Source: Selaginella moellendorffii (lineage: Eukaryota > Plantae > Lycopodiophyta). Taken from it: a stretch of 64,000 bases of DNA. The stretch's first letter is position 1, and each line of letters opens with the position of its first letter. The position numbers were made by a program, and so were the translations under genes. The notes below the pieces were generated by a model, which was not told the DNA's origin, did not search any database, and saw nothing but the letters and a program-made list of their open reading frames with translations. The stretch covers positions 1-64,000 of the forward strand of contig NW_003314410.1 of the NCBI RefSeq assembly GCF_000143415.4, in the 5' to 3' direction. Shown piece by piece: positions 42,431 to 60,717 of the stretch.

Positions 42431-42912
42431 AGTGCGAGCAGTCGCGCTCATGCTTGTCACCGTCATCTCCCTCGGCTGTGATGAAGCGAGCCAATAACTT
42501 CTCCCTTCGTGATCGAAAGGAGACAAAAGTGCCGCCGCTGCGTGCTCAAAAGCTCGCTCTGCTGCTCTTGGAGATCCAACAGCGGAAAGCAAAAAAAAGT
42601 GACAAATAACTTTAACTCTGGCCGCGGGAAGCGAAGACGACGCGCCTCGACGAGGGGCTCAGTGCACTGCTGTGTTTGTACAGACGAGGAAACAATCCAT
42701 TGGCGTGAAGACTGTGAAGTGGGAACACACTCTACGGAATGTTTTAAGAGCCACCTCCTGCAGCAAGGAAGAAAAGAAAACTCGACGTCACCAAAGCATG
42801 AACTCACGCTTACATCAGTCCAGTCACTGCTGCTACTGCTGTGCAGCCTTGTCCATCTAGAGCTGTGTAATAAAAATCCTGGCCTTTTCTAACAAATGCC
42901 TCTGGTGATCAG

Positions 42913-45331
42913 TCATCTTCCAGCCTGCAAGAGGTTTTGATGTCAACAATTCGCTAGAAAAAAGAGACAAAAGAAACCAAAAAACAAGACGCTTCTTTAC
43001 CGCTGATGATATAGAGTCGCGGTTTGAAGGCCCGGATTCGCTCCTTCTCCCTCCGGCTGAAGCGTCAGAAGGCCGCCTATACGGAGACATGGACCTGGAC
43101 AGTGTCCCCGAGCCCAGCTTGCTCAGTACGTAGTCTTCTTCTCTGTTCAAAGGGAGCAAGCCACTGCTCATTGATCTCACTCTGCACACGCAAGCAATGT
43201 GGGTGAGGCGAAAAGATAGAAAAAGTTATTCTCCGGCACCTTGCCCATGGTGGCAAAAAATACGCTCTGGTGGATCTTCCTGGTCTGAACTGTACGAGCT
43301 GCTTCAATGTCCGCGGGGAGATCACATAACTATCTGCATGCCGTATGTTAGAGGAGAGTCAAGTGGTCGCTCTCGCCTTTCTTCCTTAGCTCCTTTACTT
43401 TAGTTTTGCGCAGATAGTGTCGTGGTACCTGGATATTCTGCATAGAAGCTGTGGGGGAACCTGAGAGAAACCAGCAAGGAAAGTCACTTAGATACTGGCA
43501 AAGAACGAAAACCGAGTAACTCACTTTCCACGAGCTTTCAACTTCTCCCTTCTTGCAGTGATGCCGCGGAGGTAAGTCGTCTGACCAATCTCAAGCATTT
43601 TATGTCTCAAAAGGACATTCTCTCTTCGTAGCCTTGCCAATTCACCCTCTTTCAAGCCTCCTGGAACACAAAAACCCCTTAGGCAATATTTTTTAAGTCC
43701 CCTAAGGCTGGCACGCACCTACCACCGTGTGTTGATAGTTGCGAGCTTTCACTGGATCAATTCGCAGCATCAAATACATTTTCTTGTCTAGATTACCAGC
43801 CTGAGCTCAGAAAACTTCATCGCAAGTGAGGTATTCGTGAGCAAGAAGTTCAAAGGGATTACCGAATAAACATCACTGTCGAGATGCATCAACGTCCACC
43901 ACAAACCAGTCTCTGGATATCTCACGTTGCAGTCCGCCAATGCACTTTGGATTGAGCAGATAAGGTTCCTCCTGCAACGAAAAATCACAACTTCAATCGG
44001 AATGACATTACACCGAAGAGTACTCACGCATGTGCATAAAACAAGCAGAAGCAAACGTAACGATTCATGCAGGTTTGTGCACGCCCAGGCGTTGCACTGC
44101 AAGACACACAAGAGGACTTAGTCATTAGGAGATCGAAAACCAAGGGAAGAACGGACTCACTGTGCCACAATCTCGTTGATCGTTTTAACGGTGTCCAAAA
44201 ACTCCTCCACGCTCACAAAATCATGGAGGTGCTCACTAAAATACAAGTCCGAAGGATCAAAGATGCCGCCGGTAACGCACGAGCACGTCCCTGCAAAAAC
44301 ACATTCCCCGAATCGTCCCTGTAATTTAATAAGCAGCAGGATGGAGCAAGCAACAACACAAAAACAAATATAAAAACTTCCACCAGACAAAGTGGCACTC
44401 ACCTCCAGGATCAGCTCCAACAAACTGTGAAGCGATGATGATGGGATCATCGATGTCCGGAATGTCGCAGTCGTCTTGATACGGTGCGAATTCCGTTTGA
44501 AGCATGCCTGCTCCTCGTTTCCCACCATACTTCACAATTAGCTCCCTCAGCAAGAAACAAGGATGCACGTACTCGATTGGCCGGTCACACGTCGGGCATC
44601 TGGATAAAGCAGCCAGCAAACGAAGTTCTCACTCGCAATGTCAAACAAAAGAAAAAAAGAAAAGAAAAAAACAAAATCAGCAAGGAAGAACAAACAAAAG
44701 CTATCAGCAAAACAAGGTCTAGCAGGACCTATGAAAAAACCAAAAGATATCAGCAAAAAGAGTTCTAGCAGGAGAACAAAAGCTATCAGCAACCAAAGTT
44801 CTAGCAGGAGAACAAAAAATACCAGCAAAAAAAGTTCTAGCAAACAAAAGCTATCAAAAAACAAGTTCTAGCTATACTGCTCACAAGGGACAAGCACCAA
44901 ACTAAATTCTAGCTATCTCTCACGAGATCAAAGTAGAAGAAAAATCAAGTAACAGTCTCTCACCCTTTGGATCTGGTGAAGCTGTTTTGGAGGCATCGCG
45001 CACAGAATACGTGCCCACACCCGGTCTCCACCGCGTGCTTGAAGACCTTGGAGCACAAAGGACAGTTCAAGAACCTTACATTCTTGTCGCCGCGCAGAGA
45101 GATGCTCGACTTCCTCACGGACGACGATCGCGATCCTCGAGCTGGCGTTGCCGACCCCGCCAATGGCGATGCTACCGCTACTGGCGATGCTGGCACTGCT
45201 GCTGAGCCCGATGCCGATGCCGAGGCCTCCGGCTTGGATTCTCCCTTCTTGTCACCGCCGCTGACGCTGCCGATCCTGCTACTCCTGGTGCTGCTGTTGG
45301 CGGAGCTCGGCCTCTTGGTTGGATTCTCCAT
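42913..45331 (-). CDS. RING-HC (C3HC4) protein with a GOLGA7/ERF4-like domain; ~11 exons, 3' exons uncertain
   Basis: CPLC...CGHVFCARC...CPTC, then HLHDFVSVEEFLDTVKTINEIVAHA...CFCLFY...IQSALADCNVRYPETGLWWT; splice sites join in frame. Confidence 0.7.
44693..44873. repeat. Degenerate ~35-40 bp tandem repeat (~5 copies) in intron 1 of the RING gene
   Basis: ACAAAAGCTATCAGCAA...GTTCTAGCAGGAGA recurs. Confidence 0.85.
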
Positions 45332-45620
45332 CGCTAATTCGCTCTCATCGATCGAGCTCCAGCTGCCGCCCTCCCCTCCAAAGAGGAGTCACGCCCTTCG
45401 AGTTTTTAGGGCAAAGACAAACGAGTCCGTTTAATTTTAAAAAACCCTAATTGGCGGGAATTCAATTTCTTTGTTAGTTTCCAAAAAGCAAAACCAGAAA
45501 AGCCGGATTTTTTCCTTTCTTTTTGCCGAGAGAGCAAACGAGCGAGAAGAAGTTCTTCTTCTCCTTCTTCGTCCTCTGGAGAGAGAGAGAGAGAGAGAGA
45601 GAGGAACAGCAAAGTGAAAC

Positions 45621-49999: not shown

Positions 50000-50172
50000 C
50001 TTGCGCCAAAATCTTCTCTTCTCCTTTTTTGTGTTGTGCCGAGAACAATTCATTTGACAAAAGAGAGTCGTTTCTTAGACGAATAAGGTATCCAATCGAA
50101 CGGCTAGGATTGTTCCCAGCGATACAAGAAACGTTATATAAGATTCGTTAAGCTGATCATTGGAGGGGGCGA

Positions 50173-51484
50173 ATGGCGTCTTGGAGCTCCAGCTCTTTGA
50201 GCGCGATCTATCAAATTCTTGGATGGTTTGCGTTTGCAGTGTGGTCGATCAGCTTCTACCCGCAAGTGTTGCTCAATTACCGGCGAAAGAGGTACGCATT
50301 GATAGCTGCCGCAAGAAAACTGTTCCAATTCTCGCTTCGTCCCCTTTGCGCTTTTCTCAAGCTAGTTTTTGATTGCTTGCAGCGTCGTAGGATTGAACTT
50401 CGATTTCCAGCTGCTCAACTTCACCAAGCATTCCTCGTATCTCATCTACAACGCCGCCGTCTTCTTCAGCCCTGTCGTTCAAAGGCAGTACCACGAGAAG
50501 TATGGTCGTGACGAGGTGCGTAATTGAGAGATGGACGAAGACCCCTGAATCCTTCTCCACGTTCCAGCTGATTCCAGTTGCTGCAAACGACGTTGCGTTC
50601 TCGATCCACGCCGTGCTCCTCGCAGGATTCACAATTGTGCAAATTTTCCTGTACGAGGTAACAAAGCAAGCTGAAGAGAAAGGTGACAAGCTTACTTTGG
50701 TGTCCCTTTTAGAGAGGAGGACAAAGGGTGTCCGAGGCTGGAGTTTTGGTGTCCCTGGGAGCTTGGCTAGCCGGATTGACCGGTCTCATCGTCGCATTTC
50801 CCAGCGGCCGCTGGCTATGGCTCGTCCAAGTTTTCAAGTAAGATCCAATTCTCTTAATCTGTTAGTTGCTTGAACACTCTTAATCTTGCGCAGCATCATA
50901 CAAATGGTGATGGCAGTGATCAAGTACATCCCTCAGGTAATAAAGCTGTGATCACATCACCCAAAGTGTCGAGATCGTTTTCATGCGATCAACAGGCTTG
51001 GATGAACTTCAGGAGGAAGAGCACCGTTGGCTGGAGCATAGCAACCATTCCCCTCGATTTGTCGGGGGGAATCGCCAACATTCTCCAGATGGCCGTGCAA
51101 TCCATCGACCAACGTAAGCCTCTCGAGTTTTGTGGCTTTAGAGATCTTGACTCTCCAATCGCACAGGCTCCACCATGAACTTCTCCGGGAACGTTGGCAA
51201 ACTGGGAATCTCGCTGGTATGTTTCTACGTCACTGCAATTCTAGTCTTCCACGTTCCCTGTATACACGTTTCTAATCTTCCACGTTCATACTCTTCCACG
51301 TTCCCTGTATTCTACGTAGGAATGCATCGCTTTCGACATTCTCTTCATCTTTCAGCACTACTTCCTCTACTACAAAGCTGACAAGGTCGATGAGCTTGAT
51401 GCCACTTACTACTACGAAGTCCTGGAGAACGACCCAGAGCAGGCCAAGACCGGCCAAGTCAATGATCAGATAAAAAAACCGTGA
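50173..51484 (+). CDS. Cystinosin homolog (PQ-loop transporter), copy 1
   Basis: [54 protein letters not shown]; intact splice sites. Confidence 0.85.
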
Positions 51485-59225: not shown

Positions 59226-59461
59226 CAAGGTACATATCCCTCACAACAAACTTGCAAACTTGTTTGCATAGTCTCATGCTTTGTTAGATCTGTTGGTACG
59301 AGCAGCCATCATTCAAATGTGTAGTGAAATTTTCAAACAGATTAATGCCAATTCATTTCAGATTATCGAACGGCTAGGATTGTCCCCCTGGGTTTTGGGC
59401 CAGGTACAAGGAACCTCGGGGGTGTACATAAAGTTGATTAGGGGTTTTCGAGGGAGAAAGA

Positions 59462-60717
59462 ATGGCGTCTTGGCATTCCAGCGCCTTGGCCGTGATCTAT
59501 CAAATTCTCGGATGGTTTGCATTCACGGTGTGGTCGATCAGCTTCTATCCGCAAGTGCTGCTCAATTTCCGGCGAAAGAGGTACGCATTCGATCGCGGGA
59601 AGAATACTTCCTCGCTCCCTCAGGCCCTTTGCGTTTTTTTGCTTTCTTTTCTCGAGCTAGTTTTCGATTGCTTGCAGCGTCGTGGGGCTCAACTTCGATT
59701 TCCTGTTGCTCAACTTCACCAAGCATTCCTCGTATCTCATCTACAACGCCGCCGTCTTCTTCAGCCCTGTCGTCCAAAGGCAGTACCACGACAAGTATGG
59801 CGCTGATGAGGTGCGTAATTGAGCGACAGACGAAGAACGCTGAATCCTTTTTTCACCTTCCAGATGATTCCAGTTGCTCCAAACGACATTGCTTTCTCGA
59901 TCCATGCCGTGCTCCTCACAGGATTCACTATCCTGCAAGTTTTCCTGTATGAGGTAAGAAAGAAGAAGAAGGTGACAAGCTTACGTTTGTGTCGCTTTAG
60001 AGAGGAGGACAAAGGGTGTCCAAGGCCGGAGCTTTGGTGTCCCTGGGAGCTTGGCTAGCCGGATTGATCTGTCTCATCGTAGCATTTCCCAGCGGCCGCT
60101 GGCTATGGCTCGTCCAAGTTTTCAAGTAAGATCCAATCTCTTTCTGTGAACAGTCTTGGCATGAAAAATCCTTGCGCAGCATCATACAACTGGTGATGAC
60201 AGCGATCAAGTACATCCCTCAGGTAAACTTCCCTGCAAATCACATCACCCAGAGTGTTAACGACACCGTTTTCATGCGATTAAAACTCAGGCTTGGATGA
60301 ACTTCAGGAGGAAGAGCACTGTTGGCTGGAGCATAGGAAACATTCTCCTGGACTTGTCGGGTGGAATCGCCAACATTCTCCAGATGGCGGTGCAATCCAT
60401 CGACCAACGTAAGCCTTTCGAGTTTTCGTTTTCGGTTAAAGATCTAACTCTCCTATCGCACAGACTCCACCGAGAACTTCTCCGGGAACGTTGGCAAACT
60501 GGGACTCTCGCTGGTATGTTTGCTCTTGTTACTGTGATTCTAATCTTCGCGTTCTCTGTAGGAAAGCATCGCCTTCGACATTCTCTTCGTCTTCCAGCAC
60601 TACTTCCTCTACTACGAAGCTGACAAGGTCGAGGAGGTTGCCGCTAACACCTACGAAGCCCTGGAGAACGATCCAGAGCAGGCCAAGACCAGCGAAGAGC
60701 ATCCCAAAAATCCGTGA
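59462..60717 (+). CDS. Cystinosin homolog, copy 2
   Basis: Same exon structure as copy 1; retains [14 protein letters not shown]. Confidence 0.9.

What the first reader, a model, noticed from the sequence alone, without database searches (positions are those of the whole stretch)
43700..45331. RING E3 domain fused to a GOLGA7/ERF4-like palmitoyltransferase-cofactor domain
Seen: joining the short exons gives, after a C3HC4 RING, FSEHLHDFVSVEEFLDTVKTINEIVAHATPGRAQTCMNRYVCFCLFYAHARNLICSIQSALADCNVRYPETGLWWTL...MYLMLRI. Known (from memory): this follows the GOLGA7/GCP16 pattern F..EL...I....FEETV.TLN..YAEA....Q....CL.C...Y...I.EQN...Y...GL..T. Erf4/GOLGA7 is the accessory subunit of Erf2/ZDHHC9 S-acyltransferases and protects Erf2 from ubiquitin-dependent turnover. 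I am not aware of a characterised plant ERF4 or a RING-ERF4 fusion. Inference: a module coupling ubiquitination to S-acylation, perhaps retained in non-seed plants. It is invisible in the ORF track because it is split over many exons.
Basis: partly seen in the sequence, partly recalled or inferred. Interest (0 to 1): 0.75.

Follow-up and report, generated by a model that had tools for sequence, protein, structure and literature searches.

The report
Selaginella RING ligase with Erf4-like domain
This expressed Selaginella gene joins a standard ubiquitin-ligase RING finger to a cysteine-rich domain that probably, but not provably here, is a very divergent relative of the Erf4/GOLGA7 helper subunit of protein palmitoyltransferases, a combination I found only in this plant.

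Summary
The window is Selaginella moellendorffii scaffold GL377714.1. Spliced contigs from four sequencing runs of four studies carry the RING exons and the downstream domain exons in one molecule.

The RING is a canonical C3HC4 finger, closest to RNF4 and COP1 among solved structures.

The Erf4/GOLGA7 reading is suggestive but below every formal threshold:
- Pfam PF10256 is the only non-RING family hit in two paralogs, at E about 0.01 and 16 bits against a cut-off of 29.3. It covers only the N-terminal half of the profile.
- Protein-language-model neighbours with a family are Erf4 clusters.
- A low-confidence AlphaFold model (pLDDT 53) has the GCP16 order of strands and helices.
- That model places human GCP16 (8hf3_B) at Foldseek rank 2 of 350,542 chains, and yeast Erf4 (8hfc_B) at rank 25 of 48,161 in a separate search. 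Both scores lie in the noise range.

Only three paralogs turned up, all in S. moellendorffii. All three share the order RING, domain, coiled coil, conserved tail. Databases annotate only the RING.

Verdict: a real, expressed, lineage-restricted RING E3 family with a probable (about 0.7 to 0.8) divergent Erf4-like module. Any link to S-acylation is inference.

The parts
44964..45331 (-). Exon 1: ATG, Ser/Ala-rich low-complexity N-terminus, first six RING ligands (C90 to C113 of P0004). The 5' UTR reaches at least 45388.
   Evidence: Translation; Pfam RING hits above cut-off (zf-RING_UBOX 30.2 bits, zf-C3HC4_2 30.0 bits); RNA contigs cover 44964-45388.
44587..45064 (-). C3HC4 RING finger (P0004 residues 90-127), interrupted by intron 1 (44600-44963).
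   Evidence: Regex match; closest solved RINGs are RNF4 (E 1e-16), COP1, RING2, BRE1, BRCA1 and RNF8; intron 1 joint 44599/44964 seen in 4 runs.
44403..44599 (-). Exon 2: last CPxC of the RING, the conserved post-RING segment IEYVHP..LREL, an acidic linker, and the start of the Erf4-like domain (the DPIxIA strand).
   Evidence: invariant columns; joints.
43720..44448 (-). Erf4/GOLGA7-like domain (P0004 about 174-318), spread over the end of exon 2 and exons 3-6. It includes an invariant Cys cluster (C241, C247, C249, C269) inside a hydrophobic segment.
   Evidence: Pfam PF10256 at E 0.0099 and 0.0091; paralog conservation; hydropathy; AF2 secondary-structure order; 8hf3_B and 8hfc_B matches.
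44161..44290 (-). Exon 3: the part that matches Erf4 profile positions 21-45.
   Evidence: in the exhaustive protein search it found only P0001 and P0002.
44028..44096 (-). Exon 4: Cys-rich hydrophobic segment.
   Evidence: Joints 44096/44161 and 43970/44027; tblastn 100%.
43863..43971 (-). Exon 5: helix ending in DCN, and the PETGLxWTL strand.
43719..43800 (-). Exon 6: the YLxLRxD strand and the KARxYQ helix. Intron 5 (43801-43862) is spliced in runs X2 and X3 and retained in the X1 contig.
43525..43660 (-). Exon 7: predicted helical, coiled-coil-like segment conserved in the paralogs. The in-frame TGA just after it is removed by splicing.
   Evidence: joint 43458/43523, cut +2.
42913..43460 (-). 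Exons 8-11: conserved C-terminal tail (EYPD..VISP.TL, F.PPW.R.RS.S.G.LP..REED) ending AGR-stop. The contigs laid keep 43240-43458 unspliced, which gives the 383-aa isoform X1 with its stop at 43402-43400.

Best explanation
The gene encodes a RING-HC (C3HC4) E3 ubiquitin ligase. Its RING is followed on the same polypeptide by a domain of about 145 residues that is most likely a very divergent Erf4/GOLGA7 (GCP16)-type module. That module reads: one N-terminal strand, a long helix, a short Cys-rich hydrophobic helix, another helix and a two-strand hairpin. A coiled-coil-like helix and a conserved Ser-rich tail come after it.

Shown: the gene model, its transcription and splicing, the RING, and conservation of the whole architecture in three S. 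moellendorffii paralogs.

Inferred: the Cys-rich hydrophobic segment (C241, C247, C249) is S-acylated or dips into the membrane, as the corresponding alpha2'/alpha3' region of GCP16 does. This would put the RING on the cytosolic face of an endomembrane. It might dock beside a DHHC S-acyltransferase, where the RING would ubiquitinate the enzyme, its substrates or itself.
For: - The gene and the fusion are real. Spliced contigs from 4 runs of 4 studies join the RING and domain exons, and RefSeq and JGI proteins P0003-P0006 match the window.
- The RING is canonical, by Pfam scores above cut-off, PDB relatives RNF4 and COP1 and ligand spacing.
- PF10256 is the only non-RING Pfam family for two paralogs that are 45% identical. 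It hits the same profile register in both, at E 0.0099 and 0.0091.
- ESM Atlas feature neighbours score 0.88-0.90, and every neighbour with a family is Erf4 (also rank 5).
- The AF2 model of paralog P0002 has the order E6-13, H44-59, H65-75, H82-99, E105-111, E124-131. This equals the GCP16 topology described in bioRxiv 10.1101/2022.12.12.520165.
- In the Foldseek-free search, yeast Erf4 (8hfc_B) is rank 25 of 48,161, with 108 residues aligned at 13% identity.
- The invariant cysteines sit in the second most hydrophobic stretch of the domain. This parallels the S-acylated C69/C72 of GCP16, which lie in its hydrophobic helices (PMC13499115).
Against: - No test reaches significance by its own standard. 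Pfam gives 16 bits against a cut-off of 29.3 and covers only profile positions 21-68.
- The C-terminal halves and the third paralog's exon give no Pfam hit.
- phmmer and hmmsearch against PDB sequences miss GCP16 and Erf4.
- The models have pLDDT 39 and 53, and the Atlas fold search was uninformative.
- The Pfam, language-model and Foldseek (3Di plus amino acid) signals all use the same sequence, so they are not independent.
- The stretch between the first long helix and the next is only about 20 residues and forms one helix in the model. GCP16 has two membrane-inserted helices there, carrying the DHHC9 contacts Y76 and Y86. Docking to a PAT may therefore not be conserved.
- No partner, acylation or ligase activity was tested.
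Confidence: 0.6

Rival explanations
1. The post-RING domain is a lineage-specific, Cys-rich domain unrelated to Erf4/GOLGA7, and the resemblance is chance plus a common small alpha/beta arrangement. The protein is then simply a Selaginella-specific RING E3 with an unknown substrate-binding domain.
For: All Erf4 signals are sub-threshold. No homolog outside S. moellendorffii connects the family to canonical Erf4. The model is of low confidence. The top Atlas neighbour is a Streptophyta cluster with no Pfam family.
Against: Four different methods point to the same pre-specified family out of 24,736 Pfam models, 350,542 PDB chains and 48,161 PDB chains: the Pfam profile, language-model features, Foldseek and VIA-align. 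The matches are collinear over nearly the whole domain, and the Cys cluster lies where GCP16 is S-acylated.
Confidence: 0.25
2. The conserved cysteines (C241, C247, C249, C269) form a second zinc-binding module. The protein would then be TRIM-like: RING, then a zinc module, then a coiled coil.
For: The domain order is RING, Cys-rich region, coiled-coil-like helix, and four cysteines are invariant.
Against: There is no Pfam B-box or other zinc-finger hit beyond the RING. No histidine is conserved. The cysteines lie inside a hydrophobic helix rather than in loops or knuckles.
Confidence: 0.07
3. The fusion is a gene-model artefact and the RING and the domain belong to separate transcripts.
For: JGI models of this family contain errors: P0006 drops 11 RING residues, P0007 lacks an exon and P0002 is truncated.
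Against: Single spliced contigs span exons 1 to 10 (X1 record 1) and exons 1 to 5 (X4 record 15), with GT..AG joints seen in four studies. Three paralogs have the same architecture.
Confidence: 0.02

Closest known systems
GOLGA7/GCP16 and yeast Erf4 (Pfam PF10256), accessory subunits of the ZDHHC9/14/18/5/8 and Erf2 S-acyltransferases
   Same: Domain size is about 120-150 residues. The order of elements is the same: strand, long helix, Cys-bearing hydrophobic helix, helix, two-strand hairpin. The only Pfam hit beyond the RING is to this family. Its two PDB representatives rank 2 of 350,542 and 25 of 48,161 against the model.
   Different: The score is far below the family cut-off. The domain is fused behind a RING and followed by a coiled coil and tail, whereas the solved GCP16 and Erf4 are stand-alone subunits. 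The hydrophobic hairpin is shorter by roughly 8-10 residues; this count rests on my by-eye alignment to the human sequence from memory, which the papers confirm at 12 named positions. There is an insertion of roughly 8 residues after the first strand. No PAT partner is known.
RNF4 / COP1 / RING2 / BRE1-type RING-HC E3 ligases
   Same: C3HC4 ligands with canonical spacing, and the best PDB sequence matches (E 1e-16 to 1e-7).
   Different: None of these carries an Erf4-like domain. The similarity is confined to the RING and the short helix after it.
Arabidopsis PIRE (At3g48070)
   Same: A plant RING E3.
   Different: PIRE has a C-terminal modified RING-C2 at residues 244-290 and a Ser/Asp-rich low-complexity region, with no N-terminal RING-HC. 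My remembered link between At3g48070 and an Erf4 domain was wrong.

Membership tests
RING-HC (C3HC4) E3 ubiquitin ligases | Eight Cys/His zinc ligands with spacing C-x2-C-x9-39-C-x1-3-H-x2-3-C-x2-C-x4-48-C-x2-C | tested here: met
   The regex matches P0004 residues 90-127, and all ligands are invariant in the three paralogs.
RING-HC (C3HC4) E3 ubiquitin ligases | Pfam RING models above their gathering score | tested here: met
   zf-C3HC4_2 scores 30.0 bits against 27, and zf-RING_UBOX 30.2 against 25.2, on exon 1 alone. P0002 scores 35.0 bits.
RING-HC (C3HC4) E3 ubiquitin ligases | E2-dependent ubiquitin transfer | not testable with these tools
   Needs an in vitro auto-ubiquitination assay.
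Erf4/GOLGA7 (PF10256) | Pfam profile match at or above the gathering score (29.3 bits) | tested here: not met
   16.3 and 16.4 bits (E about 0.01) for the domain alone in two paralogs, covering profile 21-68 of 116 only. No hit for the third paralog's exon or for the C-terminal halves.
Erf4/GOLGA7 (PF10256) | Fold: three-stranded antiparallel sheet (beta1', beta3', beta2') plus two cytoplasmic helices, as in 8HF3 chain B and 8HFC chain B | tested here: inconclusive
Erf4/GOLGA7 (PF10256) | Two membrane-inserted helices (alpha2', alpha3') carrying the S-acylated cysteines | tested here: inconclusive
   A hydrophobic Cys cluster is present at the equivalent place. However, only about 20 residues and one predicted helix (H65-75) lie there, so the second helix may be missing.
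Erf4/GOLGA7 (PF10256) | Forms a complex with, and stabilises, an Erf2/ZDHHC9-class acyltransferase | not testable with these tools
   Needs co-immunoprecipitation, complex prediction with Selaginella DHHC proteins, or erf4 complementation in yeast.
PIRE-type plant RING E3 (At3g48070) | C-terminal modified RING-C2 plus a central Ser/Asp low-complexity region | tested here: not met
   Here the RING is N-terminal and of the C3HC4 type.

The most novel reading that the evidence does not exclude
The Erf4-like module really docks this RING onto an Erf2/ZDHHC9-class S-acyltransferase. That would make these proteins the first plant Erf4-type PAT partners, and the first case of an E3 ligase built into a palmitoyltransferase accessory subunit. 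It would invert the known role of Erf4, which shields Erf2 from ubiquitination.
Probability: 0.22. Interest if true: 0.75.

Novelty: new variant of a known kind. Interest (0 to 1): 0.5.

Why it matters
Erf4/GCP16 subunits stabilise their DHHC enzymes. Loss of Erf4 raises ubiquitination of Erf2 (PMC13499115). The papers I could search describe no plant counterpart. A RING ligase carrying an Erf4-like module would be a direct physical link between ubiquitination and S-acylation, and it gives a concrete set of three Selaginella genes to test. If the resemblance is only a shared fold, the result is still a small, expressed, lycophyte-restricted E3 family whose second domain no database annotates. 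The family's apparent restriction to one species limits its general importance.

Tried and rejected
- **PIRE lead.** I remembered Arabidopsis At3g48070/At5g62910 as RING plus Erf4 proteins. The papers show At3g48070 is PIRE, with a C-terminal RING-C2, so it is unrelated.
- **Exon-by-exon Pfam scan.** Only the RING and one weak Erf4 hit on exon 3 appeared.
- **Exhaustive search with exon 3.** It found only P0001 and P0002.
- **Three word-index searches.** These used P0001 85-330, P0002 390-625 and the domain-only alignment A2. Nothing turned up outside S. moellendorffii, and nothing at E<=1 for domain-sized proteins.
- **Metagenome scan with A3.** 269 pattern matches, none a relative.
- **PDB sequence searches** with exon 3 and with profile A2. 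No GCP16 or Erf4 hit.
- **First AF2 model.** pLDDT 39, and its Foldseek hits were meaningless.
- **Atlas fold search.** Uninformative.
- **Earlier notes of this scan.** Nothing relevant by place, words or sequence.
- **Steps not done.** I made no profile-profile comparison with canonical Erf4/GOLGA7, because no tool gave me such sequences by reference and I did not type them.

Full report
**What is there.**
The window is identical to the first 64 kb of Selaginella moellendorffii scaffold GL377714.1. Between a gamma-tubulin-complex gene and a B-box/CCT gene lies a minus-strand gene, LOC9652649 / SELMODRAFT_431248.

I rebuilt its exons from the sequence: exon 1 45331..44964, exon 2 44599..44403, exon 3 44290..44161, exon 4 44096..44028, exon 5 43971..43863, exon 6 43800..43719, exon 7 43660..43525, then further exons down to about 42913. 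It equals RefSeq protein P0004 (XP_024522614.1).

**Expression and the fusion.**
Logan contigs from four runs belonging to four studies were laid on 42850-45450. They show every intron between exons 1 and 7 as a GT..AG joint. One contig of 1723 nt runs from exon 1 to exon 10, and another from the 5' UTR to exon 5.

Details of splicing:
- Intron 5 is retained in one run's contig.
- The TGA after exon 7 is removed by a donor at 43525.
- The stretch 43240-43458 is unspliced in all laid contigs. That gives the 383-aa isoform X1.
- The 469-aa models splice out 43337-43429. The amino-acid sequence encoded downstream is conserved in the paralogs, so the long form is probably the functional one.

**The RING.**
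Residues 90-127 of P0004 fit C-x2-C-x11-C-x-H-x2-C-x2-C-x10-C-x2-C. Pfam RING models pass their cut-offs. The nearest solved RINGs are RNF4, COP1, RING2, BRE1, BRCA1 and RNF8. The JGI model (P0006/P0001) wrongly deletes 11 residues that include the first CxxC. RefSeq and the RNA contigs keep them.

**The family.**
The exhaustive search with exon 3 found only the gene's own cluster and one paralog, P0002, among 1.84 billion representatives. Word-index searches added a third paralog, P0007, and nothing outside S. moellendorffii. A domain-only profile found no domain-sized relatives, and a metagenome scan found none.

After correcting two faulty models from their loci, all three paralogs have the same order: RING, conserved post-RING helix, the domain, a coiled-coil-like helix and a Ser-rich tail. 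These searches cannot see relatives below roughly 40-50% identity, so absence elsewhere is not proven.

**Is the domain Erf4/GOLGA7-like?**

Evidence for:
- PF10256 is the only non-RING Pfam family. It appears for two paralogs that are 45% identical, in the same register, at E about 0.01.
- ESM Atlas feature neighbours of the domain score 0.88-0.90, and all neighbours that carry a family carry Erf4.
- The second AlphaFold model (pLDDT 53) has strand, long helix, short Cys-rich helix, helix and two strands. This is the order described for GCP16 in the cryo-EM paper.
- With that model, human GCP16 (8hf3_B) is Foldseek rank 2 of 350,542 chains over 136 columns. VIA-align superposes 80 residues at 3.1 A, spanning both proteins end to end.
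- In the independent exhaustive VIA search, yeast Erf4 (8hfc_B) is rank 25 of 48,161, with 108 aligned residues.
- Invariant cysteines C241, C247 and C249 lie in a hydrophobic stretch. The S-acylated C69 and C72 of GCP16 lie in the corresponding place.

Evidence against:
- Only the N-terminal half of the Pfam profile aligns.
- PDB sequence searches miss the family.
- The model is of low confidence.
- The signals share one underlying sequence, so they are not independent.

By eye, against the human GOLGA7 sequence as I remember it, the match continues collinearly through the C-terminal half. My remembered sequence agrees with all 12 residue numbers named. The same comparison shows the hydrophobic hairpin 8-10 residues shorter in this protein. 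This part rests on memory, not on a tool. I put the probability of true Erf4-type homology or fold at about 0.7 to 0.8.

**Mechanism.**
Shown: an expressed RING-HC protein with a conserved Cys-rich hydrophobic domain.

Inferred: the Cys cluster is S-acylated or membrane-inserted and holds the ligase on an endomembrane. It might dock to a DHHC acyltransferase, as GCP16 and Erf4 do, so that the RING acts on the enzyme or its clients. The shortened hairpin lacks a clear counterpart of the GCP16 helix that carries Y76 and Y86, which contact DHHC9. This makes the docking step the weakest link.

**Comparison and novelty.**
The solved GCP16 and Erf4 are stand-alone subunits, and I found no paper on a plant Erf4/GOLGA7 or a RING-Erf4 fusion. 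UniProt and RefSeq name these proteins only as RING-type or uncharacterised, and the precomputed Pfam lists hold only RING models. My remembered lead that Arabidopsis At3g48070 has this architecture was wrong. It is PIRE, with a C-terminal RING-C2.

I file the gene as a RING-HC E3 (membership met). I describe the second domain as Erf4-like without claiming family membership, because the Pfam threshold was tested and not met.

**Limits.**
No canonical Erf4/GOLGA7 sequence was available by reference, so the decisive profile-profile comparison was not run.

Noticed in passing
window 45043-45075 (-): The JGI gene models (P0006 here, P0001 on the other haplotype) splice out a 33-nt pseudo-intron. 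This deletes 11 residues, including the first CxxC of the RING. RefSeq models and the RNA contigs keep this stretch.
   Followed up: yes
window 43415 and 43337-43429 (-): All four runs carry a 2-nt insertion (AG on the + strand) after 43415 relative to the window. It lies inside the stretch that the 469-aa models treat as an intron but that the contigs keep unspliced. If the stretch is retained, the two alleles end the protein differently. Two further introns are spliced downstream of that stop, which would be typical of an intron-retaining, decay-prone isoform.
   Followed up: partly
window 43801-43862 (-): Intron 5 (62 nt) is retained in the main contig of run X1 but spliced in X2 and X3. 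Retention introduces a premature stop inside the Erf4-like domain.
   Followed up: partly
L001:3441-3620 (+) and L002:5300-6000 (+): The paralog models are faulty. P0007 lacks the equivalent of exon 3, which is present and contiguous with exon 2 in its locus. P0002 stops early although its locus encodes the coiled coil and the conserved tail.
   Followed up: yes
window 44741-44872: Intron 1 contains a 36-nt tandem repeat (3.8 copies, 81% matches) and an A-rich 13-nt repeat at 44643-44676.
   Followed up: partly
P0003 residues 365-440; window 43460-43001 (-): The C-terminal tail has motifs conserved between paralogs (EYPD..VISP.TL..LV, F.PPW.R.RS.S.G.LP..REED). They match no Pfam family and may be phosphorylation or docking sites.
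   Followed up: no
ESM Atlas: The nearest feature cluster to the domain is a Streptophyta family of about 211-aa hypothetical proteins (110 members, no Pfam family). These could be stand-alone plant relatives of the domain. Their sequences could not be fetched.
   Followed up: no
window 59460-60560 against 50171-51262: An 85%-identical repeat of about 1.1 kb links the PQ-loop gene region with a second place in the window (blastn).
   Followed up: no
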